A stretch of 64,000 bases of DNA from IMGVR_UViG_3300035698_029839:1-64000, one strand, 5' to 3'; positions 14,580 to 51,922 are shown, counted from the stretch's first letter. The notes: generated by a model not told the origin, from the sequence alone. Numbers and translations are program-made.

Positions 14580-14845
14580 GATATAAAGTAGGAGATAAAG
14601 TTAAAATAAAGACTTGGGGTGAAACGAAAAAACTTGTTAATTTTAATTCTTTTATGGAAAAAGAAGTTGAGGAATTGAAAACTAATAGAATATTAACTAT
14701 TAAAGTAGTAAATGAAGGTTGTTATTATGCTATGAAAGAATCACGGTGGTTTTGGAATGATGATATGATTAAATGTTTAGCAAAAGACTTTAAAAAAGAA
14801 ATATACGAACCTATTAATGATAGATTTGAGATATTAGATTTATGA
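14576..14845 (+). CDS. Small SH3/KOW-like protein with C-terminal RFEILDL tag
   Basis: YKVGDKVKIKTW...WFWNDDMI; paralog of 33322..33642; ends PINDRFEILDL. Confidence 0.65.
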   Translation: MRYKVGDKVKIKTWGETKKLVNFNSFMEKEVEELKTNRILTIKVVNEGCYYAMKESRWFWNDDMIKCLAKDFKKEIYEPINDRFEILDL

Positions 14846-26863: not shown

Positions 26864-27285
26864 TAGAGAATAAATTTATGATTAATTTTACAGATATAAC
26901 TATTAATGAAGCGGATGGGGTTTTTGCAGATGTAGAGGAAATAATGTTGGCAGAAGTTCCTTCTGTTAAAAATTGGGTTATAAGAAGTTATGTTACAATT
27001 ATTAGTGATAGCGGAGAAGGGACAATGGAGATACAATGTCATGGAGATGGTAATGTTTACATAATAGATTACGACCCGTCAATAGGAGATTTATTTTATA
27101 ATCCTGATATACAAGAGATTTCTATATGGGCTCAGGAAAAAGGGTGGAAAATACCTCAACCTCATCCTGATTTAATTAAATCGAATAAAGAGTTTTGGAA
27201 ATATTTTTATGATACTCTTGTGATAGACTCTGAATATCTCGATAAGTTATATGGGGGTAGACCACAAATAGATGGGAGTAAATAG
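26851..27285 (+). CDS. Hypothetical protein
   Basis: ORF track. Confidence 0.5.
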   Translation: MENLIENKFMINFTDITINEADGVFADVEEIMLAEVPSVKNWVIRSYVTIISDSGEGTMEIQCHGDGNVYIIDYDPSIGDLFYNPDIQEISIWAQEKGWKIPQPHPDLIKSNKEFWKYFYDTLVIDSEYLDKLYGGRPQIDGSK

Positions 27286-27515
27286 TGAATGCAGAAAAAG
27301 CTATAAAAGAAGGATATAAATGTTTTTGTTTACAATGTAACAAGGCTTATAAAAAAACTCCAAGTTATTGGGAGGAAAAAGCCAGTTGCACTGGAGCAGA
27401 GATAGAAATGTGTAGTTGCGGTTCTGATTTGTTTATGTCTTTTGAGCAGTATGTTAAACAACACGAAAAAGAAGATGGGCCTATAGAGAATCGTCTGGAT
27501 ATTTTGGATTTATGA
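27285..27515 (+). CDS. Small Zn-ribbon protein with C-terminal RLDILDL tag
   Basis: CLQC...CSCGS; ends PIENRLDILDL. Confidence 0.6.
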   Translation: MNAEKAIKEGYKCFCLQCNKAYKKTPSYWEEKASCTGAEIEMCSCGSDLFMSFEQYVKQHEKEDGPIENRLDILDL

Positions 27516-29373: not shown

Positions 29374-29883
29374 ATGAGTTATGAAAAAAAAATAAATGAT
29401 TATGTAATTAAATTTAAAGATGAACAAAGTTATTTAGAAGCAAAATTAGAAAATTTAAAATTACACCCAGATATACCTTTTCTTGGTTTTATCCAAAATG
29501 AGATGTATAACAGGGAGAAGTGCGAAGTTGAGAGCATAGAAGAAGTTAATGATGGTACTCAATATATTTCTTCTGTTCAAATATTATCGGGAGGTTCTAT
29601 ATCTGAAAACGGGGATTTTGGCGATATTATCGTCGGCAGCGAGAATCTAACCCTTTCTGGTAGTTTAGATTACACCATCAATAATGGGAATAGTCTTTAT
29701 ATAAGTACTGCTGGGGATAATGGTGCTAACTCTAATTATAATTCTTTTATAGGTTGGTCAGCAACTGATTCTCACAATGGTAATAGTAATGTTCTTATTG
29801 GCGGGTACCCTAGTGATCAATCAGAAGAGTTAAAAGAGCCAGAAGATCCAATAGAGAATAGGTTCGATATTTTAGATTTATAA
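29374..29883 (+). CDS. Hypothetical protein with C-terminal RFDILDL tag
   Basis: Gly/Asn-rich NSFIG...NVLIGG segment; ends PIENRFDILDL. Confidence 0.6.
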   Translation: MSYEKKINDYVIKFKDEQSYLEAKLENLKLHPDIPFLGFIQNEMYNREKCEVESIEEVNDGTQYISSVQILSGGSISENGDFGDIIVGSENLTLSGSLDYTINNGNSLYISTAGDNGANSNYNSFIGWSATDSHNGNSNVLIGGYPSDQSEELKEPEDPIENRFDILDL

Positions 29884-30225: not shown

Positions 30226-30585
30226 ATGAGATTCATACGAAAAGAATTTATAGTCACAACTATATTTAACAAAGAATTAACTGAGAAAGATGAAGTTCTA
30301 ATTGTTTTTAATAATCTGCTAAATGAGAGAATAGAATTCTCTATGATTATGAAAAAATACATGCCTCATCAACAAGATTATTTTAGCATAAGTTTTGAGA
30401 GGGTGAGAGTAAAAAAGATATATGAAAATGATACTGTTGATTTATTAGCTTTCAAAAAAGGAGTTAAAACAAGTATGAAAGCTGTGCCCTTTGATGATGT
30501 TATAGAAATAAATGCGACTACTAAAAAACATAAAATTTTAGATATAAATTCGGACATTGATAGATTCGATATTTTAGATTTGTAA
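30226..30585 (+). CDS. Hypothetical protein with C-terminal RFDILDL tag
   Basis: Ends SDIDRFDILDL. Confidence 0.6.
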   Translation: MRFIRKEFIVTTIFNKELTEKDEVLIVFNNLLNERIEFSMIMKKYMPHQQDYFSISFERVRVKKIYENDTVDLLAFKKGVKTSMKAVPFDDVIEINATTKKHKILDINSDIDRFDILDL

Positions 30586-30594
30586 GGAAAGATT

Positions 30595-30981
30595 ATGGAA
30601 CATAAAATGGGATTAAAAATTATAATGGTTAAAAGTGTTGAAGGGACAGAAGATTTTATAAAGGCAGAATCTAGTATTACAGGTCTCTCTGTTGAACAAG
30701 CTATATTAAATTGTTATTCAAAAGGGACAGTTATTACTATTGTTGCATTTAGTTTGAAAAATGCTATTGAAAGAGTGTTGTATCGATTAAACGCTTTATC
30801 AAAAGAAAAAAGAGAATTTTTTCTTTCGCAAATAGCGTGGGCATTAGTAGAGGTAGTAGATATGACGTGTAAGAAGGCTACTCCTATTCCAATAGGTGCT
30901 CCTGTAAAAGATTCAATAAGAGAAGATAAATTATATCGTATAGCAACATATTTAGAGAAAAATGAAAAAGAAAAAGTTTAG
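30595..30981 (+). CDS. Hypothetical protein
   Basis: ORF track. Confidence 0.5.
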   Translation: MEHKMGLKIIMVKSVEGTEDFIKAESSITGLSVEQAILNCYSKGTVITIVAFSLKNAIERVLYRLNALSKEKREFFLSQIAWALVEVVDMTCKKATPIPIGAPVKDSIREDKLYRIATYLEKNEKEKV

Positions 30982-31120
30982 ATGTGATTTTTGTGGTAGG
31001 TTTATATCAATTAAAGATTTAGATGAAGGAAAAGCGTATATAAAAATGGTTACTCCTGATTCTCATTTCACAAAAGAAGAATACGAAACTAGTTGTAAAG
31101 AATGTAATAAGAAGGACTAA
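30962..31120 (+). CDS. Small Zn-finger protein (52 aa, not in ORF track)
   Basis: MKKKKFRCDFCGRF...SCKECNKKD. Confidence 0.5.
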   Translation: MKKKKFRCDFCGRFISIKDLDEGKAYIKMVTPDSHFTKEEYETSCKECNKKD

Positions 31121-31122
31121 TT

Positions 31123-32532
31123 ATGATTTTTGATAATAAAGATTATGTTCCGCTGCATTGTCATTCCGAATTTAGTCAATTTGATGGTTTGGCAAATATA
31201 AATGATCTAGCAATGCAAGCTAGGAAAATGGGTTTCCCAGCATGTGCTCTCACTGACCATGGTAATATTATGGGTTGGATTAAATGGCTTCAAGCATGTA
31301 GAGCCACAAAAGATAAGAAAGGTAAAGATATTCCTTATGCTCCTATTAAACCTATTCTAGGGTGTGAATTTTATTTATCTCGAAAGATGGATATAGGACA
31401 AAATCAAGAAAAAAGAGATACCGAAGTCATAAAAAAGAATCAACCTGATGGACGCAGGGGAAATAGACATTTAAATCTTTATGCTATGAATTTTGAAGGT
31501 TATAAGAATATATGCAATATGTCTCAAAGGTCTTATACGGAGGGATTTTATTACGATCCTAGAATTGATATCGATATGTTATCAAAGCATTCCAAGGGTG
31601 TTATGTGTGGTTCTGCATGTCTTTCTAGTGTTATTAATGCTAATCTAATGTATGGACGTTACAACCAAGCTAGAGAGACTTGTGGTATTTTAAACGAGAT
31701 CTTTGATGGTAATTTCTTTTTAGAGATGATGTACCATGGGATTAGTGAAGAAAAAGAAATTATTCCTTTAATTTTAAAATTGTCAACAGAATTAAATATT
31801 CCTGTTGTTTGTACCAATGATAGTCATTATATCCATAAGGACCAAGGAGCATCTCAAGAAGTTTTATTATGTATGTCTCAACAAAGATGTTTGAAAGATC
31901 CTAAAAGATTAAAATTCGGTCATATGGAATTTTATTTTAAGAGCGCGGAAGAAATGGCAGTTATGTTTGGACATGTTCCTCATGCTTTAACTAATTCTGT
32001 TGTTCTTGCTGAAAGAATAGATACTAAAGATATAGAGAAAAATCTTTTTGGAGGTATGAGACTACCTAAGTTTGATATACCTAAAAAATATAAAAATCCA
32101 TATGATTATATGTCTATTTTAGCATGGGAAGGAATGGAGAGAATTGGATGGGACAAAAGTAAAGAACATGTAGATACTTTAAAAATGGAATTAGAAGATG
32201 TGAAAGTTGCATATGAAAATAATAATTATGATTTCTCTACATATTTTTTAATAGTTAGAGATTATATATTAGAAGCTAAAAAGATGGGAACTTTTGTTGG
32301 TTGCGGCCGTGGTTCTGGGTATGCTAGTGTATTATTAAGATGTCTTGAAATTACTTATGGGGTAGATCCATTAAAGTACGGTCTTCTATGGGAAAGATTT
32401 TTGGGATTTGACTCCAAAAGGTTTATTAAAGAATCAGATTTCGGATTTGAAGAAGACTTGGTGCAACAAGCAGCAGATAGAGATTTGGAAGGAGATTTAG
32501 AGGAAGATTTAGGAGGCATTGATAGATATTGA
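31123..32532 (+). CDS. dnaE: DNA polymerase III alpha, fragment 1 (PHP domain and start of palm)
   Basis: LHCHSEFS.FDG, TDHG, PILGCEFY, TNDSHY, GCGRGSG, DPLKYGLLWERFL. Confidence 0.9.
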   Translation: MIFDNKDYVPLHCHSEFSQFDGLANINDLAMQARKMGFPACALTDHGNIMGWIKWLQACRATKDKKGKDIPYAPIKPILGCEFYLSRKMDIGQNQEKRDTEVIKKNQPDGRRGNRHLNLYAMNFEGYKNICNMSQRSYTEGFYYDPRIDIDMLSKHSKGVMCGSACLSSVINANLMYGRYNQARETCGILNEIFDGNFFLEMMYHGISEEKEIIPLILKLSTELNIPVVCTNDSHYIHKDQGASQEVLLCMSQQRCLKDPKRLKFGHMEFYFKSAEEMAVMFGHVPHALTNSVVLAERIDTKDIEKNLFGGMRLPKFDIPKKYKNPYDYMSILAWEGMERIGWDKSKEHVDTLKMELEDVKVAYENNNYDFSTYFLIVRDYILEAKKMGTFVGCGRGSGYASVLLRCLEITYGVDPLKYGLLWERFLGFDSKRFIKESDFGFEEDLVQQAADRDLEGDLEEDLGGIDRY

Positions 32533-32756
32533 TAGATACAGATATTAATTGGAATGAACTAACAGAGCAAGAGAGAGAGAAAATACTTCAAAAAATATTA
32601 TCAACAGAAGAAGGTCTAACTGCAATGGCTATGAGTATGGCTCCCTCGCAGAAGGGATATAAGGAAGCACAAGAAATATATATTAAAAAATATGGAAGAA
32701 TAAAAAAAGAAATACTTGTTCCTATAAATGATAGATTTGAAATATTGGATTTATGA
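32529..32756 (+). CDS. Small protein with RFEILDL tag
   Basis: Ends PINDRFEILDL; N-terminus similar to 32772. Confidence 0.6.
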   Translation: MIDTDINWNELTEQEREKILQKILSTEEGLTAMAMSMAPSQKGYKEAQEIYIKKYGRIKKEILVPINDRFEILDL

Positions 32757-32771
32757 AGGAAGAACTTACAA

Positions 32772-33065
32772 ATGGCTTTATCTGATTGGTCTGAAGAAAA
32801 CAAAGAAATAATTAAAAATGCTTTAAAAACGACAGAAGGAAGAGAAGGATTTAAAGAAGCTTTTTATGATACTGTAAATATTTCACTAGAAGATTATTTA
32901 ACGCAAACTTCTGAATCTTTAGGAACAGATGATTTAGAAAAGCATGTGCATAAAATAGTAGAAGATGTATCAGACATATTAGAAATAATTTATGAAAAAG
33001 ATGAAATAAAAGAAACAAAAATAGATAATCCTATAACTACCAGATTGGATATATTAGATTTATGA
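32772..33065 (+). CDS. Small protein with RLDILDL tag
   Basis: Ends PITTRLDILDL. Confidence 0.6.
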   Translation: MALSDWSEENKEIIKNALKTTEGREGFKEAFYDTVNISLEDYLTQTSESLGTDDLEKHVHKIVEDVSDILEIIYEKDEIKETKIDNPITTRLDILDL

Positions 33066-33319
33066 TTAAGGAAGAATTTAAACATGTTAAACTTTTTCCA
33101 ATGCAGGAAAATTTAATTGAAGAGATGGCAAAGGTTCAACCAATTGCAGACGAGTTAGAAGCACTAGGATATATCTATGCTCCGTACATTCCTTTGCAAA
33201 TATCTCTTACTCCTACTCTTAATATTTCTGATTTAATTACTCCCAAAAAATATACTATTAGGAAATATACAGATATTTATTCAGATATTGATAATAGATT
33301 TGAAATATTGGACTTATAA
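33062..33319 (+). CDS. Small protein with RFEILDL tag and a gp23-like GYIYAPYIPL peptide
   Basis: LGYIYAPYIPLQ; ends DIDNRFEILDL. Confidence 0.6.
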   Translation: MIKEEFKHVKLFPMQENLIEEMAKVQPIADELEALGYIYAPYIPLQISLTPTLNISDLITPKKYTIRKYTDIYSDIDNRFEILDL

Positions 33320-33321
33320 TT

Positions 33322-33642
33322 ATGAAATACAAAGTTGGCGACATAGTAAAAATAAAAACATGGGAAGCTATGGGGAGAGAGTTTATTTTTACGACTAGTG
33401 GGAATATATCAATACATAAGACTTCTCAGTATTCAACAGGGATGGAAGATCTTTTAAAAGAGATAGATACTAATAGGGTAGTAACAATATTAAAAGTGAT
33501 AGATAATGTTGTTCCCCCCAGAATACCTCATTACAAGATAGAAGAATTTGATGCTACATGGGTTTGGACAGATGAGATGATAGAGTGTAGTGCAGTGCCA
33601 GCAGTGCCGATACAAGACAGATTTGAGATTTTAGATTTATAG
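33322..33642 (+). CDS. Small SH3/KOW-like protein with RFEILDL tag
   Basis: YKVGDIVKIKTW...WVWTDEMI; paralog of 14576. Confidence 0.62.
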   Translation: MKYKVGDIVKIKTWEAMGREFIFTTSGNISIHKTSQYSTGMEDLLKEIDTNRVVTILKVIDNVVPPRIPHYKIEEFDATWVWTDEMIECSAVPAVPIQDRFEILDL

Positions 33643-33678
33643 TTTGTAAAGTGAAAGTTATTTTAATATATTTAAGTA

Positions 33679-34722
33679 ATGGCAGAAATCGAAACAAGAA
33701 AAAAAGAGATAATAGAATACGTTACTAAAAAACATTCTAAGAGCGACAAGTTATCTAAAATTATTTCAAAAGTTAAAGAAGAACTTGATGTTTTGGGATC
33801 AACTGATGGCTTAGAAGCAAAGAATAATTTAGAAGTATTTTATAATATATGGAAAAGTCATAAGGGCAAAGTAGGTCATAAGAATGATATAAATAGCTGG
33901 ACTGCTTTCTTTTTAGGCTTAACCAAAGTCAAACCTGATAAGGATTTTCTTCCTACCAGACGCGCTTTTGCAAGAGCTGGATTCCCTGATATTGATACTG
34001 ATTTTGATTATGAGAGCAGGGATAGTGTTTATACTTATATTATTGATAAATATGGTAGGGACAATGTGGGAAATATAGGAACTCATGGTTTGTTAAGATT
34101 TAAATCATGTGTCACTCGAGTTACAAAAGCCTTAGATTTAGCTAATGCTTATCATAAGGGGGACAGTCTTTTTGTTAGTGAGAATGCTGCAAAAGTGACT
34201 GAAATTTTATCACCTTTTCCCAAAAAAGGATTATTAAAAGTTACAGATGAAGATGGAGAAAGTCATCTTATAAAAACTTTTGAAGATGCATATGCGCATT
34301 GCTCTGATTTTAAGCACTATGTAGATAAGTATAAAGATAGTGGTTTTAAAAAATACATGGAACAAATTGAAGGCACTTTTGCTAATTTTGGATGTTTAGC
34401 AAAGGATACTCCTATTCTGACCGATGGAGGATGGAAAAGAATTGACCAGCTTTCTACCAAATTTTCTATAGCTTATATTAATAAGGATGGGGAAATTTCT
34501 TATACTGATAGATATAAAGCATTTAAAACAGGTAGAAAAAAAGTATATAGATTAAAACTTAAGGACGGTAGATTTATAGATGTGACTGATGAGCATCTTA
34601 TTTTTACAGATAAAGGATGTGTTAAATTTGAAGAAATTAGAAAAAATAAAGAAAATTATAAAATTTATGGAATAAAAAAGGATTCTTTGAAGAATGATAG
34701 GATTACTATACCAGCAGTGTGA
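33679..34722 (+). CDS. dnaE: DNA polymerase III alpha, fragment 2 (catalytic PDIDTD) fused to split-intein N-half
   Basis: FPDIDTDF...YIIDKYG...EGTFANFG, then CLAKDTPILT...VTDEHLIFT. Confidence 0.88.
   Translation: MAEIETRKKEIIEYVTKKHSKSDKLSKIISKVKEELDVLGSTDGLEAKNNLEVFYNIWKSHKGKVGHKNDINSWTAFFLGLTKVKPDKDFLPTRRAFARAGFPDIDTDFDYESRDSVYTYIIDKYGRDNVGNIGTHGLLRFKSCVTRVTKALDLANAYHKGDSLFVSENAAKVTEILSPFPKKGLLKVTDEDGESHLIKTFEDAYAHCSDFKHYVDKYKDSGFKKYMEQIEGTFANFGCLAKDTPILTDGGWKRIDQLSTKFSIAYINKDGEISYTDRYKAFKTGRKKVYRLKLKDGRFIDVTDEHLIFTDKGCVKFEEIRKNKENYKIYGIKKDSLKNDRITIPAV
34393..34719 (+). mobile_element. Split intein, N-fragment (109 aa)
   Basis: Block A CLAKDTPILT, block B DVTDEHLIF; no C-terminal HN in this ORF. 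Confidence 0.85.
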
Positions 34723-34743
34723 TTTCTTACAGGAGGTATAGTA

Positions 34744-35604
34744 ATGAATAAATGTAAAATTTGCGGTAAAGAATTTAATAAAAGAATTTCTTTAGAGAGA
34801 CATATAACTAGTTCTTATGGTAAAGAAAAGAAAAAAAAGCATTGTCCTATTTTAGTTTATAAGTGGAAGTATGAGAAAAATAATAGATTTTCTAAAAAAA
34901 GTTTGATTAAGATGTATATAAAAGATAAAAAATCTACGCCTATGATGAAAGAAGAGTTGCAAATTAATAAAAAAACTCTTTTAGATACTATGCATTTTTA
35001 TAAAATTAAAATGAGAAGTATATCGGAAGCTTCTAAAAACCAGATTGAAAGGGATGGCTTGTGGAATAAAGGGCTTACTAAGAGGGACCATCCATCTATT
35101 ATGTCTTATGCTAAGCAAAGAAAAGGGAGAAATAATCCTTATTATACTGCTCCTAATTTTGAAAAAAGAAAGAAAAGAAATTTGGAGATATTAAAAAAAA
35201 CTTGGAAAAGTTTTAATGGAAAAAGGAATCCTAAATCCACAGAAAGAAGAATGGCTAAGATTTTAGACCAAAATAATATATATTATATTAGAAATTTTTC
35301 ATTAAATTATTATGAAAATGGGAAAACCAAATGGAGATTATTTGATTTTTTTATTGAGGGAAAATTATTAGTAGAAATGAATGGTAATTATTTTCATGCT
35401 AATCCTAAAATATATAAAGCAGATGATGAAATAGTTATAGCTAAAAGCAAGAGAAAAGCGAAAGATATATGGGAATATGATGTTAAAAAAATGAAGCTGG
35501 GCAAAGATAGTGGCTATAAAACATTAGTTTTGTGGGAAGCGGATTTTGTAGAGATGACAGATAAAGAAGCAATAAAAGAAATTAGGAGTTTAATAGATGA
35601 TTAG
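34744..35604 (+). CDS. Free-standing homing endonuclease (Vsr/DUF559-like nuclease domain)
   Basis: NUMOD-like WNKGLTK, GRNNPYY; STERRMAKIL...FDFFIEGKLLVEMNGNYFHANP...LVLWE. Confidence 0.75.
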   Translation: MNKCKICGKEFNKRISLERHITSSYGKEKKKKHCPILVYKWKYEKNNRFSKKSLIKMYIKDKKSTPMMKEELQINKKTLLDTMHFYKIKMRSISEASKNQIERDGLWNKGLTKRDHPSIMSYAKQRKGRNNPYYTAPNFEKRKKRNLEILKKTWKSFNGKRNPKSTERRMAKILDQNNIYYIRNFSLNYYENGKTKWRLFDFFIEGKLLVEMNGNYFHANPKIYKADDEIVIAKSKRKAKDIWEYDVKKMKLGKDSGYKTLVLWEADFVEMTDKEAIKEIRSLIDD

Positions 35605-35845
35605 CGAAGAAAATGAATTGCCTGAAAAATTTAAAGAAGTAATGCATCGTGCTTTTAAAGATTGTGACGAATTTTATAATGAAATTAGGGATATTCCTAT
35701 TAGTAAAGTAAAAGATTTAACAAATATAATAAAACTTTTTAAATCAAATATCTCAAATGAAAATGAGCAGAGTTATATTATAGACGGAAAAAGGGTTTTC
35801 AACCTGGCCGATATTAAAGAGGTTCAAAAAAAATATAATGAGTAA
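35597..35845 (+). CDS. Hypothetical protein inside the split-intein locus
   Basis: ORF overlapping both neighbours. Confidence 0.5.
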   Translation: MISEENELPEKFKEVMHRAFKDCDEFYNEIRDIPISKVKDLTNIIKLFKSNISNENEQSYIIDGKRVFNLADIKEVQKKYNE

Positions 35846-35978
35846 TTTAAATTTGTTTAATATAGAATCAATTGAAGAATTAGATTTTGAAGATGTTTAT
35901 GATATTTCAATAGATGAAGATTGTGTTTTTTTTCAAAACGAGCATAATTATATAGCAAATAATATAGTTGTTCATAAT
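35838..35978 (+). mobile_element. Split intein, C-fragment (47 aa)
   Basis: VYDISI...HNYIANNIVVHN followed by Ser+1. Confidence 0.88.
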
Positions 35979-37685
35979 TCTCATGCTGCGGGTGTGGTCG
36001 TATCGGATGTCCCTCTTGATCAAATAGCTCCATTAAGAAATGCTAGGAAGGGAATGCTGGCTACTCAATTTCCTAGTGAAGATTTAGAACTTCTCGGTCT
36101 TATCAAATTTGATGTTCTGGCTATAGCCACTTTATCAGTTATTAAAAAAGCAGTAGAAATGATAAAAGAATATTGGGGGATAGAGATAGATGTAGAAAAT
36201 CTTCCTATGAATGATGAATCTACATTTGAAATTTATCGCAAGGGGAATTTGGGAGGAGTTTTTCAATGCGAAAAACATGGTATGCAAAAAACTATGAGAG
36301 ATATAGGGGTAGATCGTTTCGAAGATGTTATAGCTGGACTAGCACTACATCGTCCAGGCCCTATGGATAGTATTCCTGAGTATTGTGCCAGGAAACACAG
36401 GGAAAAAGATGTTGATTATTTTCATCCCTCAATTGAGCCATATGTAAAGCCTTATTTAGAAAGTACTTACGGTGTCCTTTGCTTCCAAGAACAGGTTATG
36501 CAAATTTGTAATAGTCTTGCTGGTTTCACAATTACTGATGGATATATTATGATAAAAGCGATTGGTAAGAAAAAAGAGCACTTGATGAAAAGATTCGAAG
36601 AACAATTTATTTCTGGTTGTGTAGAAAAAAAAGTTCCCCAACATGTTGCTCAGCAGTATTGGACTAAGTTTATTACTCCATTCTCATCTTATGGGTTTAA
36701 TTTGTGTCTTGATGGAAGCATGAGTGTTAAAAATAAAAAAGATGGAGAAATTTATGAAATTGAAGAATTAGAAAAAGAATTTAAAAAAGGAAATAAATTA
36801 GAAATTGTATTGGATAGTTATAAGGGAGGGCTTATTGTGGAAGATATAGTTGTTGATATATTTTGCACAGGTAAAAAAGATATTTATGAAATAGAATTGG
36901 ACAATGGGTCTATTTTAAAATGCACTTTGGATCATAAGTTTATATGTGATGATGGCAACGAGCATACAGTAAAAAAGATTATGGAAGAAGATTTAAATAT
37001 TTTATATTTTCAAGAAAATATGAAAAAGTGCAAAATAAAATCAGTTAAATATCTAGAGAAAAAAAAAGCATTTAATTTAACCATGAAATCAGGACAGCAT
37101 AATTATGCTCTTTATGATATGAATAACAAATGTAGTGTTATAAGTCGTAATTCTCATAGTGCATGCTATGGTTATAACTCTTATACAACAGCATATTTAA
37201 AAGCTAATTATCCTGATGAATTTATATGTTCTTTATTAGATGTGACGATAAGTGGTTCTCAAGGAGAGAGATATGATAAGGTTGCTGCATTTGAGAGAGA
37301 ATTTAAAAAGAAGATGAATATTAAATTTCTTTCCAGAGATATAAATAAATCAAAAGTATTGTTTACTATTGAGAAAAGAAAAGATCTTTCAGAAGGCGTG
37401 AAAAAAACAGAAATACGCCCTAGTCTTTTATGTAAGGGGCTTTTGAAAAAATCAGCTATGAATATAGAAGAAAATCAACCATATGATGATATGAGAGATT
37501 TTGTTAGAAAAACTAATTCGTCATTAATTGATATAAGGGTAGTGGAGGCTTTGACTACAGGTGGATATTTCGGGAAAAAGTATATGGAAGATCCATCTGT
37601 TATTGTGAAAGATTTTGTGATGATTAGAGAAGATATGAAAAAAACTGCTAAAAAAGGAGTAGAAACTGTCGATTTATTTGCATAA
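35838..37685 (+). CDS. dnaE: DNA polymerase III alpha, fragment 3 with N-terminal split-intein C-half and an internal mini-intein
   Basis: SHAAGVVV, GLIKFDVL, GVFQCE, RPGP, TYGVLCFQEQVM, YGFN|SHS, YLKANYP. Confidence 0.9.
   Translation: MSNLNLFNIESIEELDFEDVYDISIDEDCVFFQNEHNYIANNIVVHNSHAAGVVVSDVPLDQIAPLRNARKGMLATQFPSEDLELLGLIKFDVLAIATLSVIKKAVEMIKEYWGIEIDVENLPMNDESTFEIYRKGNLGGVFQCEKHGMQKTMRDIGVDRFEDVIAGLALHRPGPMDSIPEYCARKHREKDVDYFHPSIEPYVKPYLESTYGVLCFQEQVMQICNSLAGFTITDGYIMIKAIGKKKEHLMKRFEEQFISGCVEKKVPQHVAQQYWTKFITPFSSYGFNLCLDGSMSVKNKKDGEIYEIEELEKEFKKGNKLEIVLDSYKGGLIVEDIVVDIFCTGKKDIYEIELDNGSILKCTLDHKFICDDGNEHTVKKIMEEDLNILYFQENMKKCKIKSVKYLEKKKAFNLTMKSGQHNYALYDMNNKCSVISRNSHSACYGYNSYTTAYLKANYPDEFICSLLDVTISGSQGERYDKVAAFEREFKKKMNIKFLSRDINKSKVLFTIEKRKDLSEGVKKTEIRPSLLCKGLLKKSAMNIEENQPYDDMRDFVRKTNSSLIDIRVVEALTTGGYFGKKYMEDPSVIVKDFVMIREDMKKTAKKGVETVDLFA
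36705..37151 (+). mobile_element. Contiguous mini-intein in DnaE (149 aa)
   Basis: CLDGSMSV...CTLDHKF...VISRN|S interrupts the YGFNL-SHS motif. Confidence 0.82.
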
Positions 37686-37728
37686 AAGTTTGAAAAGTGA
37701 TTGTTATTACATTAAAAAGTAGTTGTAT

Positions 37729-37935
37729 ATGAACATAATAAAATGTCCTGAATGTGGAAGTGAAGATTTGTTTGTATATGACATCGATGGGTGTATTAAA
37801 GAGGGTAGAATTATCGAAGAAACGGAGTGCTTGAAATGCAATCACATTTTTACCGTAAAAGCAGAATTATCTAAAATAGAAATAGAGATAGAAAAGGAGA
37901 TAAAAAAATGCCAGAAGAACATAAAACTACTTTAA
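37729..37935 (+). CDS. Small Zn-ribbon protein
   Basis: CPECGS...CLKC. Confidence 0.5.
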   Translation: MNIIKCPECGSEDLFVYDIDGCIKEGRIIEETECLKCNHIFTVKAELSKIEIEIEKEIKKCQKNIKLL

Positions 37936-38222
37936 GATTAGAGATAGATAAAACTATCCAGCCAAAACAATATGAGCCGATTAAGATTCAATTATCTATT
38001 GAAGAAAGTCTTTTTTGGAAAGACGAAAAAGACAGAGAAGAGAAAATAAAATTTTGTTCAGAAAAAATTACAAAAGATTTTATTAAAGCCTTTGATCATG
38101 TTGTTGCAGAAATAGGAGAAAAGGATAGATGTATTGCAATAGTAAATGGTTCTGGAAAAGTTACTGATAAAAAAGAACAAGTTGTTTCTTCTTCTCCTGA
38201 AGAAGAATGGGACTTTAGTTAA
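37908..38222 (+). CDS. Hypothetical protein
   Basis: AAGGAG RBS; KQYEPIKI motif; acidic W tail. Confidence 0.55.
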   Translation: MPEEHKTTLRLEIDKTIQPKQYEPIKIQLSIEESLFWKDEKDREEKIKFCSEKITKDFIKAFDHVVAEIGEKDRCIAIVNGSGKVTDKKEQVVSSSPEEEWDFS

Positions 38223-38236
38223 AATAGGTGTGAATT

Positions 38237-39457
38237 ATGACAAATGAGAATAGTTTACAAGAATTTGAAGATATGTTCAATCTATCTTCTAAAGATGAGG
38301 AAAATGGTCAAGCAGAAGAATATGGACATAGCATGAATTCTAAAGAACCATTTGAAAAGTTAGTAGAAGATGTAAGAGAGGATATAAAACAAGTTGAAGA
38401 TAAGGGTAGTTCTTTAGAAGTTGAAGATAAGGGTAGTTCTTTAGAAGTTGAAGACAAGGGTATTTCTTTAGAGGTTGAAGATCCTCATGATATTGTTAAG
38501 GATGTTGCGTCAAGAAGTAGTGAAGATGACCAAGATATTGTAAGCCCTGTTGAGGGTGTAGCTAATGTTGAAGAAGAAGATTTTGATTCTCTGCCCGACC
38601 AAGAGATAAAAACAGAAGAGATAAGAGAAATAGTAAAAGACATCAACGATTTTCATAGTGATATAAAAGTTGAAGAAGAAAAAGAGCAAGAAGAAAAAAA
38701 GAAAGAAGAGACAGAGAAAAAAGAGACGGAGAAAAAAGAGACGGAGGATGGGGAAACATCTCCTCTTGATAAGATTACCGTAGAAAGTTTCTCCATACTT
38801 GATGGTGACAAGATTAGATGGTCTTTAAAAAGTCCTTCTACTATGTACGATCCTTTTTATAGGCAAAAGAAAATAGTATTAGATAGTTGTCTTGCTGGGG
38901 GGCAGGTAGAATGCTCTTCGTGGAATGAAGAATTAAGAGATGCTCAAGTTAATGTAATTACTGAAGTTTTTGATCAACAAGTAATTATCAAACAAATGGA
39001 AGAAGTACAGCAGTTTAGAAATAGGGTTAAGTATATTGGTGTTAGAGTTAATAACCAATATTTCTTGTTCGATAGGTTTACACCCTTGTTGAGGGGATAT
39101 CTGGCAAGAATTCAATATTTAAAACCTGTTCTTAAGCAAGATGGTCTTATTTTAGAGCATATGGGCGATGTTGAAATGTATTTTGAAAGGTTGAGGGGTT
39201 TGCATAAATCTGTTGCTGATACAGAAAAGAATTTAGCAGCGGCTTATGAAATGCTTAGTAGAAAAGTAACTATTTGTATGGAACTTCCCCCTGTTGAAAG
39301 ATATAACAAACCAGAAGCTACACCATATCATTCTAAATTTTCAACTTCCAAAGAAATTACACCTTCGGAACTGGACGATTTTGATAATCTTCCTGACCAT
39401 GCTGAGGCAGGCCCATTAGAGAAAAAGAGTGGGGCAATTAGTTGGAACGAAATTTAA
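38237..39457 (+). CDS. Hypothetical protein (acidic low-complexity N-half, helical C-half)
   Basis: ORF track; lies upstream of SSB and RecA. Confidence 0.6.
   Translation: MTNENSLQEFEDMFNLSSKDEENGQAEEYGHSMNSKEPFEKLVEDVREDIKQVEDKGSSLEVEDKGSSLEVEDKGISLEVEDPHDIVKDVASRSSEDDQDIVSPVEGVANVEEEDFDSLPDQEIKTEEIREIVKDINDFHSDIKVEEEKEQEEKKKEETEKKETEKKETEDGETSPLDKITVESFSILDGDKIRWSLKSPSTMYDPFYRQKKIVLDSCLAGGQVECSSWNEELRDAQVNVITEVFDQQVIIKQMEEVQQFRNRVKYIGVRVNNQYFLFDRFTPLLRGYLARIQYLKPVLKQDGLILEHMGDVEMYFERLRGLHKSVADTEKNLAAAYEMLSRKVTICMELPPVERYNKPEATPYHSKFSTSKEITPSELDDFDNLPDHAEAGPLEKKSGAISWNEI
38393..38482 (+). repeat. 27-bp in-frame tandem repeat, about 3.3 copies (VEDKG[S/I]SLE)
   Basis: GTTGAAGATAAGGGTAGTTCTTTAGAA units. 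Confidence 0.9.
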
Positions 39458-39546: not shown

Positions 39547-40245
39547 ATGGCAGAATATGTTCAGTGGGGTTCAGTCCCAAAAAGTGGTAATGGTGGAGAA
39601 AGAGGAGAATTTCTTAAGTTAAAGACAGGTAACACCTATCGTATCCGTCCTGTTTTTGATCCTCTGAAGTTCTATAAGTATTTTCACAAAAATGATAAAA
39701 GGTTGAGAACAGCTATCTGTGCAAAACCAGATATTTGTCCTGTTAGAGATAGGCATCCAGAGCTTAAAAAGCCTTCTATGCGTTACGCGGCTTATGTTAT
39801 TGATCGAGAAGATGGTAAGGTTAAAATTCTTGAAGCACCTCAGTCTGTATTCCGTCCAATCGGAAGTAGTTTTGAAGCTACAGGTAAAAATCCTGGAAGT
39901 GGTGCTGATGGTAGCGATTGGCAGATCAAGGTAACGGGTACAGGGTTGAATACTACTTATGATGTAGCATTTGCAGGTAATACTCCTCTTACTCAAGAAG
40001 AAAGAGCTTCTATAAAAGAGGCATTAGACGGAGATATGAAGAGACTTGAGAAAATTTACAAAAACGATACTTCAGAAGAGATCGAAGAAAAGCTGTTTGG
40101 AGATCCTGATAAGGCATCTAGCACTTCATCTAATGATGTTAGTTTTGGTAATTCACCTATTGAGCCTGTTGCCGCTGTTGAGCCTGTTGCCGCTGTTGAG
40201 AAACCAACAGAAAGTTCTGATAGCGATTGGGAAAATAACTTTTAA
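39547..40245 (+). CDS. Single-stranded DNA-binding protein (gp32-like)
   Basis: FLKLK.G...RIRP, CPV, YVIDREDG.VKIL, D..I..TG.GLNT.Y; acidic tail ending SDWENNF; precedes recA. Confidence 0.7.
   Translation: MAEYVQWGSVPKSGNGGERGEFLKLKTGNTYRIRPVFDPLKFYKYFHKNDKRLRTAICAKPDICPVRDRHPELKKPSMRYAAYVIDREDGKVKILEAPQSVFRPIGSSFEATGKNPGSGADGSDWQIKVTGTGLNTTYDVAFAGNTPLTQEERASIKEALDGDMKRLEKIYKNDTSEEIEEKLFGDPDKASSTSSNDVSFGNSPIEPVAAVEPVAAVEKPTESSDSDWENNF
40160..40200 (+). repeat. 18-bp tandem duplication (EPVAAV)
   Basis: TTGAGCCTGTTGCCGCTG twice plus a partial copy. Confidence 0.85.
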
Positions 40246-50503: not shown

Positions 50504-50735
50504 AGTTATACATATAATTTCTAATCATCTATCAATAGAATTACAAAAAGAAGATTTAAATTCTAATTTTATTGTGGATTTAGGTGCGGACAGTTTGGAC
50601 TTGATTGGAGTTGTAATGTTGGTAGAAGAAGAATTTAATTTGTCTCCTATTCCTGATAAAGAAGCAGAAAATATTTTAACTACAAAATTATTAATAAATT
50701 ATATTTATACAAAATTGAATAATGAGTCTAGCTAA
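50478..50735 (+). CDS. acpP: Acyl carrier protein
   Basis: DLGADSLD...VEEEF...IPDKEAE; phosphopantetheine Ser present. Confidence 0.88.
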   Translation: MDRQEIENKVIHIISNHLSIELQKEDLNSNFIVDLGADSLDLIGVVMLVEEEFNLSPIPDKEAENILTTKLLINYIYTKLNNESS

Positions 50736-51123
50736 ATATATTCCATTAAGAGATGCCATACTGAAATATGGTGGCAAAGATATGCCAGTTATAGCCATAA
50801 AGAAGTTTTGTGTAGATATAGATAGACTAACATCTTCTTATGAGGTGTGGTTAGATGTTAATGATGCTTCTGGGATAGTAGAGGCATCTGATAATGTTGT
50901 AGTTAATGCTATTAGTTTAGTTCCTACAGATATGGACGAACCTGCATTTTTCGTTATTGATGGAATATCTGTTTCTTGTTCTATAAAACACTATGTTTAT
51001 CATTCTATTAAACATGCTTATTTAGTTAGGGTAGAGTTTCTTTTAAGTAGAGATGATGTTAAACCATATATGATCGAGGAAGATAATAAAGATCAAAATC
51101 GTTTTGATATTTTGGACTTATGA
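50722..51123 (+). CDS. Hypothetical protein with RFDILDL tag
   Basis: Ends DQNRFDILDL. Confidence 0.6.
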   Translation: MSLAKYIPLRDAILKYGGKDMPVIAIKKFCVDIDRLTSSYEVWLDVNDASGIVEASDNVVVNAISLVPTDMDEPAFFVIDGISVSCSIKHYVYHSIKHAYLVRVEFLLSRDDVKPYMIEEDNKDQNRFDILDL

Positions 51124-51452
51124 GCGATAAAGTTAAACAAATTACTATTGATGACTCAGTAACAGATAAGGAGTCTATCTATAAAATATTAGCACAATGT
51201 GCACATGATGAAGGAATCTCAATTTTTAAAGTAGCAGATAGTTCTATCGATAATATCCAAAAAATGGATAAAGACTGTCGAAGATATCGACAAAGAATTA
51301 GCGAACTCGCTGGAAAAGAAAGCAAATATAGAAAAGAAGTATTAGAACTAGAGAGAAAAAAGATAAAACTTGAGAAAGGACTTAAAGAGTTAGAAAAAGA
51401 AATAAATTTTCGAGTTATGAATGATAGTCGTTCTAATTGGTTGGATTTATAA
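51120..51452 (+). CDS. Coiled-coil protein with divergent tag (RSNWLDL)
   Basis: Ends DSRSNWLDL. Confidence 0.55.
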   Translation: MSDKVKQITIDDSVTDKESIYKILAQCAHDEGISIFKVADSSIDNIQKMDKDCRRYRQRISELAGKESKYRKEVLELERKKIKLEKGLKELEKEINFRVMNDSRSNWLDL

Positions 51453-51922
51453 TGGACTTATTACAAGTAATAATACCACAACCTCCAGATTTTCGTATCT
51501 TGTTGGAAGATAATGAAGAAATAAGAATTATAAGATATGAACAAATAAATATGAATTTTTGTGATAGGGTAGTATACAAAGATGGTAAAAAGAAAACAGT
51601 TCAATCTCCACTTATTACTTATTTAGTCGAATTAGATAATCAATCAAAAGAGCAATTAAAGAAATTATTTTCAGATTCTTTTGAATCTAATGATAGCACG
51701 ATACAAACAAGATCTGCTAGAATCAAAGTGGGTAGAGATGGATATGTATATAATGTAGAAGTATCAGCTAGACCAGATATGAATGATTTTGTTTATTCTT
51801 CCAAAATATTTCAAGAAAGAGTTAAAATATGTTTAAGGCTAGAAGAGACGAGTATATCTTTATTTGATAGAGCGAATGAGGCTTATGAAAAATATGAACG
51901 TTTTGAGATTTTGGATTTATAA
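51452..51922 (+). CDS. Hypothetical protein with RFEILDL tag
   Basis: Ends YERFEILDL; TAATG coupling to the upstream gene. Confidence 0.6.
   Translation: MDLLQVIIPQPPDFRILLEDNEEIRIIRYEQINMNFCDRVVYKDGKKKTVQSPLITYLVELDNQSKEQLKKLFSDSFESNDSTIQTRSARIKVGRDGYVYNVEVSARPDMNDFVYSSKIFQERVKICLRLEETSISLFDRANEAYEKYERFEILDL

What the first reader, a model, noticed from the sequence alone, without database searches (positions are those of the whole stretch)
31123..34010. Second, intein-independent break in DnaE just before the catalytic PDID motif, with a degenerate duplicated palm segment
Seen: canonical DnaE reads ERFL-x(~7)-PDID contiguously. Here fragment 1 ends LLWERFLGFDSKRF plus an acidic tail, and PDIDTD lies about 1.5 kb later in fragment 2. 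The first ~95 aa of fragment 2 (KEELDVL...NSWTAFFLGLTKVKP) look like a decayed copy of fragment 1's MELEDV...ASVLLRCLEITYGVDP. No intein motifs flank this break, and four tagged genes sit in the gap. Inference: a polymerase from three genes that ends up as two chains, with the PHP/GRGS part assembling non-covalently. The PHP metal ligands look intact, so that chain may be a separable proofreading subunit.
Basis: partly seen in the sequence, partly recalled or inferred. Interest (0 to 1): 0.62.

Follow-up and report, generated by a model that had tools for sequence, protein, structure and literature searches.

The report
Two-chain phage DnaE, split in the palm
This roughly half-megabase phage encodes its only recognisable replicative DNA polymerase (a bacterial-type DnaE) as two protein chains cut through the catalytic palm domain, an arrangement shared by at least about a hundred related phage contigs that probably arose from an old internal duplication.

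Summary
The break is real and is not an artefact. Fragment 1 (31123-32532, 469 aa) carries the PHP domain and the NTP-binding half of the palm (GRGS, ERFL), then stops. Fragment 2 (33679-34722) carries the catalytic PDIDTD strand.

- Four small genes ending in ..ILDL lie in the gap. No intein or intron signal flanks this break.
- At least 118 homologous clusters of 422-494 aa stop at the same place. About 90 partner chains of 636-682 aa start with the same 89-aa extension.
- That extension has no significant sequence match to fragment 1. Folded alone, its five best PDB matches out of 48,161 are all C-family polymerases, at exactly the N-terminal palm subdomain. HMMER alignments to canonical DnaE run collinearly into it. 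The duplication claim therefore holds.
- The copy is not decaying: dN/dS is 0.05-0.12.
- A complex model of an intein-free orthologous pair scores ipSAE 0.87 against 0.00 for the best control. It places fragment 1's GRGS/ERFL against the catalytic strand.
- Unsplit relatives of about 995 aa exist but nest inside the split clade and carry a deletion scar.

Most likely this is an obligate two-chain polymerase with a composite active site, not a separable proofreader. I rate it a new variant of known split phage polymerases.

The parts
31123..32532 (+). DnaE chain 1 (469 aa): PHP domain, NTP-binding half of the palm, dead copy of the catalytic strand, and an acidic tail
   Evidence: ORF. Pfam PHP at aa 11-205 (E 1e-40) and DNA_pol3_alpha profile positions 3-98 at aa 330-431. 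Aligns to Mtb DnaE1 5lew residues 3-422. At least 118 orthologous clusters have the same length.
31153..31737 (+). PHP domain core. The nine metal ligands are H12, H14, D21, H46, E82, H116, C166, D233 and H235
   Evidence: Pfam hit. Motif positions. All nine columns are invariant in 74 orthologues. Each aligns to the identical residue of Mtb DnaE1.
32110..32415 (+). Live N-palm (NTP-binding) subdomain, with GCGRGSG at 32299-32319 and WERFL at 32389-32403
   Evidence: G395-R396-G397-S398-G399 and R425-F426-L427 are invariant. Residues 388-401 and 419-442 are in the confident predicted interface with the core chain.
32416..32448 (+). KRFIKESDFGF: a dead copy of the segment leading into the catalytic strand. 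It occupies the place of ..PDIDxDF, and the second Asp is replaced by Gly
   Evidence: HMMER aligns it to ..smpdididf.. of 5lew. F434, D439, F440 and G441 are invariant or nearly so. It is conserved in all listed orthologues.
32449..32529 (+). Acidic linker of variable length plus the conserved C-terminal motif EEDLGGIDRY (32500-32529)
   Evidence: The motif is present in most of the 120 orthologues. G466, G467 and R470 are invariant; D469 and Y471 nearly so. dN/dS 0.078 against L004. It is not in the confident predicted interface. Its role is unknown.
32529..33642 (+). Gap with four small passenger ORFs (75, 97, 85 and 106 aa), each ending R[FL][ED]ILDL
   Evidence: No Pfam match reaches its curated cut-off and no PHROG matches at E<=0.001. 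Gap content differs in every relative examined, so these ORFs are not part of the polymerase.
33679..34722 (+). DnaE fragment 2 (347 aa): pseudo-N-palm, catalytic strand, thumb part, then the N-half of a split intein
33679..33945 (+). Pseudo-N-palm (aa 1-89): four helices, a diverged copy of the NTP-binding subdomain without the GS motif (GHKNDINSW in place of GRGSGYASV)
   Evidence: Alignment A1. AF2 pLDDT 85. VIA-align top hits are the N-palm of C-family polymerases. HMMER collinearity. Residues 38-82 touch chain 1 in the complex model.
33982..34005 (+). Catalytic strand FPDIDTDF, carrying the first two catalytic Asp (D104, D106)
   Evidence: P103, D104, D106, D108 and F109 are invariant in 90 orthologues. 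It superposes on E. coli alpha from residue 392 onward.
34393..34719 (+). N-terminal half of a split intein (starts CLAKDT after ..FANFG)
   Evidence: Pfam Intein_splicing at aa 246-323. Weak DnaB/gp41-1 intein matches. Orthologues L004 and L005 read straight through ..FANFG[CF]HAAG...
34744..35845 (+). Free-standing ORF of 286 aa and a small ORF of 82 aa between the intein halves (the 'fractured gene' layout)
   Evidence: phrog_22677, function unknown, E 1e-17. The layout matches Dassa et al. 2009, PMC2677866. Endonuclease function was not shown here.
35838..37685 (+). DnaE fragment 3 (615 aa): C-intein half (aa 1-47, ends VVHN|S), end of the palm with the third catalytic Asp (IKFDVL, 36102-36119), fingers, a mini-intein (aa 290-438, 36705-37151), an HhH domain, and the C-terminal VDLFA (37668-37682)
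   Evidence: Pfam DNA_pol3_alpha 212-260, DNA_pol3_finger, Intein_splicing and HHH_6. Motifs. K281 and D283 are invariant in orthologues.

Best explanation
**What it is.** The phage's DnaE works as an obligate heterodimer of two polypeptides.

**Chain 1** is fragment 1 (469 aa). It supplies the PHP domain, a likely 3'-5' proofreading exonuclease, and the live NTP-binding half of the Pol-beta-like palm (GS motif GRGS and the ERFL helix).

**Chain 2** is 657 aa. In this window it is made from fragments 2 and 3 by trans-splicing of a split intein and cis-splicing of a mini-intein. It supplies the three catalytic aspartates, the thumb, the fingers, the HhH domain and a C-terminal clamp-type motif.

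**How it assembles.** The active site forms across the chain boundary. Chain 1's N-palm packs on chain 2's catalytic sheet, as it does inside a one-piece DnaE.

**Where the break lies.** It sits inside an old tandem duplication of the [N-palm + catalytic strand] unit.
- Copy A kept the N-palm and lost the Asp strand (SDFGF).
- Copy B kept the strand and lost the GS motif; this is the 89-aa head of chain 2.
- These two dead halves are conserved. I infer that they provide extra inter-chain contacts.

**The gap** has since become a landing site for passenger genes (ILDL-tagged ORFs, homing endonucleases).

**Shown here:** the anatomy, conservation, purifying selection, fold likeness, and a model-level prediction of binding.

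**Inferred:** catalytic activity, exonuclease activity, the role of the dead halves and of the ..DLGG[VI]DRY tail, and the order of evolutionary events.
For: **Anatomy and overlap of Pfam positions:**

**The break is shared.**
- All four viral loci fetched have a fragment 1 ending just after ERFL.., at 63-83% identity. In L004, L005 and L007 the separate chain 2 follows; L006 ends before it.
- An NCBI assembly shares it too.
- At least 118 of the best 120 fragment-1 homologues are 422-494 aa, on contigs up to 473 kb.
- About 90 chain-2 homologues are 636-682 aa without a PHP domain.

**Sole polymerase.** A CheckV-100%-complete 548-kb relative has only this split pair, with no Pfam family A or family B polymerase.

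**Purifying selection.** dN/dS is 0.05-0.12 in every segment, including the head and the tail.

**Invariant residues.** GRGS, ERFL and the nine PHP ligands in chain 1. PDxDxDF and K..D in chain 2.

**Complex model of the intein-free L004 pair.**
- ipSAE 0.87, 0.88 and 0.87, against 0.00 for the best of three controls.
- That mark was reached by 58 of 80 solved complexes and 2 of 110 mismatched pairs.
- The three runs share at least 88% of contacts, and the partner pLDDT is at least 84.
- The interface includes chain 1 residues 388-401 and 419-442, and chain 2 residues 38-82 and 91-125.

**Fold evidence.**
- The chain 2 model superposes on E. coli alpha 392-910 from residue 97 (Z 27). Its head is not in the canonical N-palm place.
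- The head folded alone matches the N-palm of C-family polymerases as the top five of 48,161.

**Sequence evidence for the duplication.**
- HMMER matches to canonical DnaE start at query 65-72, equivalent to protein residues ~357-378 (the GRGS region), and in several cases at query 5-34, equivalent to 272-325.
- One-piece DnaEs with both copies exist: P0167, P0203, P0248, P0252, P0284, P0285, P0336.
Against: - No experiment supports any of this. Activity, assembly and exonuclease function are all inferred.
- The complex score may partly reflect the model's memory of one-piece DnaE structures. It shows that the pair looks like a cut DnaE, not that it binds.
- The tail motif, the most conserved feature of chain 1's C-terminus, is not placed in the interface and remains unexplained.
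- Sequence statistics alone do not establish the duplication.
- The fold match has a moderate Z (7.5) for a small helical domain, and Foldseek gives no significant hit.
- The trees are quick LG+G4 searches with SH-aLRT support only.
- No read-level or RNA check was possible.
Confidence: 0.75

Rival explanations
1. Chain 2 is a self-sufficient polymerase that uses its own 89-aa N-palm-like head at the active site. Chain 1 is an accessory, exchangeable PHP proofreading subunit that merely docks.
For: - The head has the N-palm fold and is under strong constraint, with invariant polar residues N69 and S73.
- The PHP ligands are intact.
- A subset of chain-1 orthologues lacks the tail, which hints at variable docking.
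Against: - The head has lost the GS motif, which established knowledge of Pol-beta-type nucleotidyltransferases treats as needed to hold the incoming dNTP.
- Chain 1 keeps GRGS and ERFL invariant in 74 orthologues.
- The complex model puts those residues against the catalytic strand.
- In the monomer model the head is not in the canonical position.
- About 400 predicted contacts argue against an exchangeable subunit.
Confidence: 0.12
2. On the origin only: the split was created by insertion of a mobile cassette (a homing endonuclease gene with flanks) into a one-piece dnaE, as in the T4-family 'genes in pieces'. The 89-aa head came in with the cassette rather than from a duplication. Unsplit relatives are then the uninvaded ancestral state.
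For: - The gap in L005 holds an ORF matching HNH and homing-endonuclease PHROGs (E 1e-14 and 7e-8).
- L006 and L007 have an endonuclease-like ORF abutting the start of chain 1; the L007 one matches HNH endonuclease PHROGs.
- Gap content is highly variable.
- Precedents exist in nrdA/mobE and gp43 43A/43B (PMC2988022).
Against: - The head folds like the N-palm and aligns collinearly with it, as a duplication predicts.
- Unsplit forms sit at four separate places deep inside a 99%-supported clade of head-bearing forms.
- Unsplit forms carry a 17-residue ERFL-to-PD spacer containing KRFFARAGF. That segment matches chain 2's own ERFL-equivalent segment. Canonical DnaE has only 7-8 residues there.
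- The window's own gap has no endonuclease gene.
Confidence: 0.15
3. The pieces are joined after transcription or translation by an unrecognised intron, ribosomal bypass, or a non-canonical protein ligation that uses the ..DLGG motif. The mature enzyme would then be one chain.
For: - One-piece natural proteins that keep both copies exist (P0167 at 1101 aa, verified on its contig), so a joined product would be viable.
- The tail has an invariant GG and no assigned role.
Against: - No Rfam intron match and no intein motif at this break.
- The gap is 1.1 kb in the window, 0.27 to 2.9 kb in relatives, and is filled with same-strand ORFs that have their own starts, stops and tags.
- A subset of orthologues lacks the tail altogether.
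Confidence: 0.03
4. The break is an assembly artefact or a decaying pseudogene.
For: None found beyond the mere presence of a stop codon.
Against: - The same break appears in more than 100 independent assemblies from JGI, ENA, NCBI, Logan and Tara.
- dN/dS is 0.05-0.12.
- It is the only polymerase found in a complete genome.
Confidence: 0.01

Closest known systems
Split 'minimal' DNA polymerase III alpha of group 2.2 (T4-like) jumbo phages (Iyer, Anantharaman, Krishnan, Burroughs, Aravind 2021, PMC7824862)
   Same: A phage C-family polymerase catalytic module encoded as two proteins. It is cut at the same seam, between the N-terminal NTP-binding subdomain and the C-terminal Mg2+- and template-binding part, and the authors predict the two proteins reconstitute one enzyme.
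   Different: - That version is minimal (no PHP or other domains), its two genes are far apart, and it accompanies a family B polymerase.
- Here the enzyme is a full PHP-palm-thumb-fingers-HhH DnaE, and the genes are 1.1 kb apart on one strand.
- No family A or B polymerase is found.
- Each chain keeps a dead copy of the other's half.
T4-family 'genes in pieces': gp43 split into 43A/43B (Aeromonas phages 25 and 44RR) and nrdA split by mobE (phage Aeh1), reviewed in Edgell, Gibb, Belfort 2010, PMC2988022
   Same: An essential phage replication enzyme is cut into two separately translated polypeptides without an intein or intron. The pieces co-purify and are active. Homing endonuclease genes or untranslated spacers lie in the gap.
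   Different: - Different enzyme families: a B-family polymerase and a ribonucleotide reductase.
- No duplicated subdomain at the junction has been reported, to my knowledge.
- Those splits are confined to a few phages. Here the split is ancestral to a large clade and has been healed several times.
'Fractured genes': split intein plus a free-standing endonuclease gene, including three metagenomic DnaE loci (Dassa et al. 2009, PMC2677866)
   Same: This describes the other break in the same gene (34393-35978): a split intein with an ORF between the halves, plus an additional intein, as in their DnaE-1 locus.
   Different: The break under study has no intein halves, so the chains stay separate.
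Canonical one-piece DnaE with an active PHP proofreader (M. tuberculosis DnaE1, PDB 5lew/7pu7)
   Same: All nine PHP metal ligands, the GS motif, three catalytic Asp, fingers and HhH are present. It is the best PDB sequence match to chain 1 (E 9e-54), and chain 2 superposes with Z 25.
   Different: - 5lew/7pu7 is one polypeptide with no duplicated N-palm, and it has C-terminal OB and tau-binding regions.
- Here Pfam shows nothing after the HhH domain.

Membership tests
C-family replicative polymerase, DnaE type (Pol III alpha) | N-terminal PHP domain with the nine metal-binding residues | tested here: met
   Pfam PHP E 1e-40. H12, H14, D21, H46, E82, H116, C166, D233 and H235 are invariant in 74 orthologues and identical to Mtb DnaE1 in the alignment.
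C-family replicative polymerase, DnaE type (Pol III alpha) | Pol-beta-like palm with a GS motif and three catalytic aspartates | tested here: met
   GRGS at chain 1 aa 395-398. D104 and D106 on fragment 2. The third Asp lies in IKFDVL on fragment 3. All are invariant. They are spread over three ORFs and two mature chains.
C-family replicative polymerase, DnaE type (Pol III alpha) | Fingers and HhH (beta-binding) domains | tested here: met
   Pfam DNA_pol3_finger E 6e-50 and HHH_6 E 3e-8. The model superposes on 2hnh residues 392-910 with Z 27.
C-family replicative polymerase, DnaE type (Pol III alpha) | One continuous polypeptide through the palm | tested here: not met
   Stop at 32530-32532 and a new start at 33679, with four ORFs between them. 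The break is shared by more than 100 orthologue clusters.
C-family replicative polymerase, DnaE type (Pol III alpha) | C-terminal OB fold and tau-binding domain | tested here: not met
   No Pfam domain follows HHH_6, and the protein ends about 35 aa later with ..VDLFA. Distant versions could escape Pfam.
Split-intein 'fractured gene' (Dassa 2009) | N- and C-intein halves flanking the break | tested here: not met
   At the 32.5-33.7 kb break there is no Intein_splicing hit in the chain 1 tail or the fragment 2 head. The criterion is met only at the other break (34393-35978).
Group I / group II intron | Match to an intron RNA family between the coding pieces | tested here: not met
   Rfam scan at E-value threshold over 31000-38000 gave 0 matches. 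In addition, the two pieces overlap in homology instead of abutting.
Genes in pieces by homing-endonuclease insertion (Friedrich 2007; Edgell 2010) | A homing endonuclease gene in the gap | tested here: inconclusive
   There is none in the window's gap. One is present in relative L005 (PHROG HNH and homing endonuclease). Endonuclease-like ORFs abut chain 1 in L006 and L007.
Genes in pieces by homing-endonuclease insertion (Friedrich 2007; Edgell 2010) | Close relatives with the uninterrupted ancestral gene | tested here: inconclusive
   Unsplit forms of 991-998 aa exist. They nest inside the split clade and carry a scar, so they look derived.
Split minimal Pol III alpha of jumbo phages (Iyer 2021) | Cut between the NTP-binding and Mg-binding subdomains | tested here: met
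   GRGS/ERFL are on chain 1 and PDIDTD is on chain 2. The paper's description was read.
Split minimal Pol III alpha of jumbo phages (Iyer 2021) | Minimal module without PHP; the two genes distant; co-occurs with a family B polymerase | tested here: not met
   PHP is present. The genes are 1.1 kb apart. No DNA_pol_B match in the window's genome or in two relatives, one of them complete.

The most novel reading that the evidence does not exclude
The break lies inside an ancient tandem duplication of half of the palm. The two dead halves are the Asp-less strand plus tail on chain 1 and the GS-less N-palm on chain 2. In this reading they pack on each other as a catalytically dead 'pseudo-palm' that mirrors the live one, so the chains are held by a reciprocal double handshake. 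This pre-built redundancy is what allowed a replicase to be cut through its active site. Lineages have since moved repeatedly between split, re-fused (about 1100 aa) and scar-bearing healed (about 995 aa) states.
Probability: 0.3. Interest if true: 0.7.

Novelty: new variant of a known kind. Interest (0 to 1): 0.55.

Why it matters
**A natural split replicase.** If confirmed, this would be a full-size C-family replicase whose nucleotide-binding and metal-binding halves sit on different polypeptides. It is widespread, strongly conserved and apparently the sole polymerase of phages of about 0.5 Mb.

**Ready-made comparison material.** The family contains split, fused-with-duplicate and healed forms. 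Together they allow tests of how a polymerase active site tolerates fission, and of the 'duplicate, degenerate, then split' route of gene fission.

**Link to earlier work.** The seam coincides with the one proposed for the minimal split Pol III alpha of other jumbo phages. That suggests it is a preferred fracture plane of the Pol-beta-like palm.

**Practical consequence for annotation.** Annotators see two 'DNA polymerase III alpha' genes, or a 'PHP domain protein' and a 'hypothetical protein', and may call them pseudogenes. They should be paired instead.

Tried and rejected
**Searches that found nothing or were not informative.**
- Rfam at E<=1 over 31-38 kb: nothing.
- Sigma-70 promoter and terminator scan: counts equal to shuffles, not informative.
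- hhalign of the head profile against the chain 1 N-palm profile: E 0.25, in the right register but not significant.
- Pfam scan of 60 heads: no DNA_pol3_alpha hit.
- PDB profile search with the heads: no DnaE hit.
- Foldseek of the head against PDB: no hit at E<=0.001. PolC and DnaE1 had the best TM scores, 0.48-0.54.
- Pairwise blastn and blastp of the two copies within the window: chance level.

**Ideas considered and dropped.**
- An alternative register in which ..NSWTAFFLG.. corresponds to ..LLWERFLG... I rejected it because HMMER and the more canonical-looking double-copy proteins P0285 and P0336 align ..NSW.AY.LG.T..KP with the GS-following helix, and ..FLP.RRAF.. with ..LLFERFL...
- The first gap ORF begins (M)IDTD, which I read as chance. 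It is not conserved in L004 or L005.
- The tail ..ELxxDLGG|VDRY resembles a double-glycine or ubiquitin-like processing site. I have no evidence for that and leave it unexplained.

**Other checks.**
- A search for other ORFs with the GG[VI]DRY end found only chain 1 itself and one gap ORF in L005.
- The best tblastn hits in the phage collection (~37% identity, 'human fecal' records) include at least one bacterial contig with a canonical 1153-aa DnaE. I did not use it as kin.

**Tool problems.**
- The first complex-prediction run found the machine busy.

**Step deliberately left out.** I did not build the spliced fragment 2+3 sequence of the window. The natural intein-free orthologue L004:12353-14323 was used by reference instead.

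Full report
**Setting.** The window is the first 64 kb of a 297.7-kb IMG/VR virus record that CheckV rates 62% complete. GC is about 30%, GC skew is uniformly positive, and essentially all long ORFs are on the + strand. The finding lies in a replication module, with a RecA homologue and a DnaG-type primase just downstream. Related contigs reach 351 kb and 548 kb, the latter rated 100% complete. This is therefore a 'huge phage' lineage.

**Observation.**
- ORF 31123-32532 (469 aa) has a PHP domain (aa 11-205) and Pfam DNA_pol3_alpha profile positions 3-98 (aa 330-431).
- It carries GCGRGSG and WERFL, continues ..GFDSKRFIKESDFGF, and ends with an acidic tail ..EEDLGGIDRY.
- ORF 33679-34722 matches profile positions 68-160, with FPDIDTDF at aa 102-109. 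Its C-terminal part is the N-half of a split intein.
- ORF 35838-37685 begins with the C-half of that intein and carries the end of the palm, the fingers, a second mini-intein and the HhH domain.
- The 1.1-kb gap holds four small ORFs ending R[FL][ED]ILDL.
- Neither intein motifs nor any Rfam family flank this break.

**Not an artefact.**
- All four viral loci retrieved with fragment 1 (63-83% identity) have a fragment 1 of 451-474 aa that stops at the same place.
- In three of them (L004, L005, L007) a separate, intein-free chain of 653-660 aa follows. It equals fragments 2+3 minus inteins, since 238 + 419 = 657. L006 ends before that chain.
- An NCBI assembly shows the same layout.
- In the large protein collection, the best 120 homologues of fragment 1 are almost all 422-494 aa. 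They end shortly after ERFLGF..(F/Y)..DFGF. Most have a variable acidic linker and a nearly fixed end ..[ED]D[LMFQ]GG[VI]DRY. A subset stops right after DFGF.
- About 90 of the best 120 homologues of the second chain are 636-682 aa without a PHP domain.
- dN/dS between the window and L004 or L005 is 0.05-0.12 in every segment, including the 89-aa head and the tail. dS is near saturation.
- The complete 548-kb relative has no Pfam family A or family B polymerase and no other C-family gene. The split enzyme is the only recognisable replicase.

**Is the head of fragment 2 a copy of the N-palm?** By direct comparison it is not detectably so.
- blastp E 0.35.
- Profile-profile E 0.25, though in the expected register GHKNDINSW.. 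/ GRGSGYASV...
- No Pfam or PDB sequence hit for the head alone.

Three other lines support homology.
1. HMMER alignments anchored on the catalytic strand run back into the head. They reach profile position 68 in Pfam and Taq residue 424. In dozens of canonical 1150-1200-aa DnaEs they reach the GRGS region, and in several they reach residue ~272-325. The alignment is always collinear.
2. The head folds confidently into four helices, both alone (pLDDT 85, built from an alignment of heads only) and inside the whole chain. In an exhaustive VIA-align search of 48,161 PDB representatives, the only five hits with Z>=5 are C-family polymerases aligned over their N-palm. These include 5lew_A 315-408 (Z 7.5, rmsd 2.5 A, 82 aligned), PolC 9qpc_A 826-958 (Z 6.6) and E. 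coli 5fku_A 286-388 (Z 6.5). Two more C-family chains rank 9 and 12. The Z value is moderate for a helical domain and Foldseek is not significant. However, the rank specificity and the exact region are hard to ascribe to chance.
3. More distant one-piece DnaEs carry both copies in one chain, with a more canonical second copy. In P0285 and P0336..NSW.AY..G.T..KP.. is followed by ..RVSPPDVDLDF.

Conversely, fragment 1's ..KRFIKESDFGF aligns to the ..PDIDIDF strand with the second Asp lost. So each chain keeps a dead copy of what the other supplies. The copies are diverged but not decaying.

**Assembly.** I used the natural intein-free orthologous pair from L004, by reference and with ortholog alignments.
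- The complex model gives ipSAE 0.88, 0.87 and 0.87, against 0.00 for the best of three controls.
- In the tool's calibration that mark was reached by 58 of 80 solved complexes and 2 of 110 mismatched pairs.
- The runs share at least 88% of contacts, and the partner pLDDT is at least 84.
- The confident interface of about 360 residue pairs includes chain 1 residues 388-401 (GRGS loop) and 419-442 (ERFL to DFGF).
- It also includes chain 2 residues 91-125 (catalytic strand and following helix) and 38-82 (the head).
- PHP residues contact the palm and fingers.
- The tail (aa 454-471) is not placed.
- A pass can come from the model's memory of one-piece DnaE. It shows that the pair looks like a cut DnaE, not that it binds.
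- In the monomer model of chain 2, superposition on E. coli alpha starts at residue 97, equivalent to 392 (Z 27). Even without chain 1, the head is not put in the canonical N-palm site.

**History.** Trees were built on the part C-terminal to the catalytic strand, using quick LG+G4 searches with SH-aLRT support.
- Rooted on canonical DnaEs, head-bearing forms make a 99%-supported clade of 67 rows.
- The unsplit forms of about 995 aa sit at four separate places deep inside it.
- The re-fused forms of about 1100 aa that keep the head sit next to split sisters.
- Unsplit forms read ..ERFL-GFDEDDDG-KRFFARAGF-PDVD... That is 17 residues from ERFL to PD, against 7-8 in canonical enzymes.
- Their KRFFARAGF matches chain 2's ..RRAFARAGF.., which is itself the ERFL-equivalent of the second copy.

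I read this as a deletion scar: these genes were healed by loss of [dead strand .. head]. The opposite direction, repeated invasion by a mobile split cassette, is not excluded. Head-bearing and canonical forms are also interleaved in the sister group, so the deep history is complex.

Gap content differs in every relative.
- One small ORF in L007.
- A 151-aa ORF in L010.
- About eight ORFs in L004.
- An endonuclease gene (matching HNH and homing-endonuclease PHROG families) plus three small ORFs in L005.

The gap is a landing site, and its genes are passengers.

**Mechanism proposed.**
1. *Shown:* three ORFs are translated separately.
2. *Inferred from motifs and from intein-free orthologues:* fragments 2 and 3 are ligated by the split intein (Cys1 .. 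HN|S) and the mini-intein is removed. This gives a 657-aa core with all three catalytic Asp.
3. *Model-level support:* chain 1 binds so that its GS motif and ERFL helix complete the nucleotidyltransferase site. Its PHP domain takes the usual position.
4. *Inferred from nine invariant ligands, identical to those of M. tuberculosis DnaE1, whose PHP is the proofreader (established knowledge):* the PHP domain proofreads.
5. *Inferred:* the two dead halves add interface. The tail motif binds something not identified here. The C-terminal ..[VI]D[LIM]F.. of the core is a clamp-type motif.

**Comparison with what is known.**
- The closest precedent is the split minimal Pol III alpha that Iyer et al. 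predicted in T4-like jumbo phages (PMC7824862). It has the same seam. However, that module is PHP-less, encoded by distant genes, and sits beside a family B polymerase.
- Non-intein split polymerases and reductases of T4-type phages (43A/43B, nrdA-mobE; PMC2988022) are functional precedents for 'genes in pieces'.
- The other break in this gene is a textbook 'fractured gene' (PMC2677866).
- Five full-text searches found no description of a PHP-bearing DnaE split in the palm with reciprocal dead copies. That is not proof of absence.

**Verdict.** It is a new variant of a known kind, of moderate to good interest.

Noticed in passing
whole genome G000; in the window e.g. 14576-14845, 27285-27515, 29374-29883, 30226-30585, 32529-33642, 50722-52374, 62175-62723: Thirty-three + strand ORFs of 58-182 aa in the 297-kb record end in a near-identical C-terminal tag ..[DN]R[FL]x[IL]LD[LM], typically DRFEILDL. 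'LDL' is by far the commonest C-terminal tripeptide (35 ORFs, against 4 for the next). The same tag, as ILDL or ILDI, ends small ORFs in L004, L005 and L007. It is acidic-hydrophobic, like clamp-binding or docking peptides, but its role is unknown.
   Followed up: partly
window 32500-32529; L005 10566-10898: The end of chain 1, ..E[DE]D[LM]GG[VI]DRY, is almost fixed across orthologues. In the 548-kb relative, a 110-aa ORF in the gap ends with the same 13 residues. Nucleotide identity there is only 80% over 40 nt, so it is the peptide that is kept, not a recent copy. A pattern search found no other ORF with this end in three genomes.
   Followed up: partly
window 34393-35978 and 36705-37151: The same dnaE carries a split intein (CLAKDT.. 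/ ..VVHN|S) with a 286-aa ORF and an 82-aa ORF between the halves. It also carries a separate mini-intein (CLDGSM.. / ..ISRN|S) in the fingers at GFNL|.HSACYGY. Orthologues L004, L005 and L007 have neither.
   Followed up: partly
proteins P0293, P0299: More distant DnaE relatives of about 610-640 aa begin with a C-intein half (..VHNS) placed right at the GS-motif position (..GRG|S..). This fracture sits right at the GS motif, close to the seam, but is intein-mediated.
   Followed up: no
L007 7202-8014; L006 1736-2467: An ORF overlaps the start codon of chain 1 in two relatives. The L007 ORF matches PHROG HNH endonuclease and endonuclease VII families. The L006 ORF is similar by eye and was not scanned. 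The window has small Zn-ribbon-like ORFs there instead (30962-31120).
   Followed up: partly
window 32512-32545: The stop of chain 1 overlaps the TTG start of the first gap ORF within a short tandem TTGATAGATA TTGATAGATA. As a result that ORF begins (M)IDTD. This is probably coincidence and is not conserved in relatives.
   Followed up: partly
window 38237-39457: A 406-aa acidic protein has tandem ..EDKGSSLEV.. repeats and a conserved C-terminal half. It has no Pfam match but is conserved in position, between dnaE and the SSB-like gene, in L004, L005 and L007.
   Followed up: no
window 39547-40245: A conserved 232-aa protein without a Pfam match ends in an acidic tail with a terminal aromatic residue (..SDSDWENNF; relatives have ..DDWESNF and ..DDFANNW). 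This resembles SSB-type tails. Its position next to recA suggests that it is the phage single-strand-binding protein.
   Followed up: no
L008 (MT835501.1): The best tblastn hits in the phage collection are unannotated 'Bacteriophage sp.' records from human faecal samples. The locus examined looks bacterial: a canonical 1153-aa DnaE next to ORFs that by eye resemble a phosphofructokinase and an RNA methyltransferase. It was used only to read a canonical junction.
   Followed up: partly
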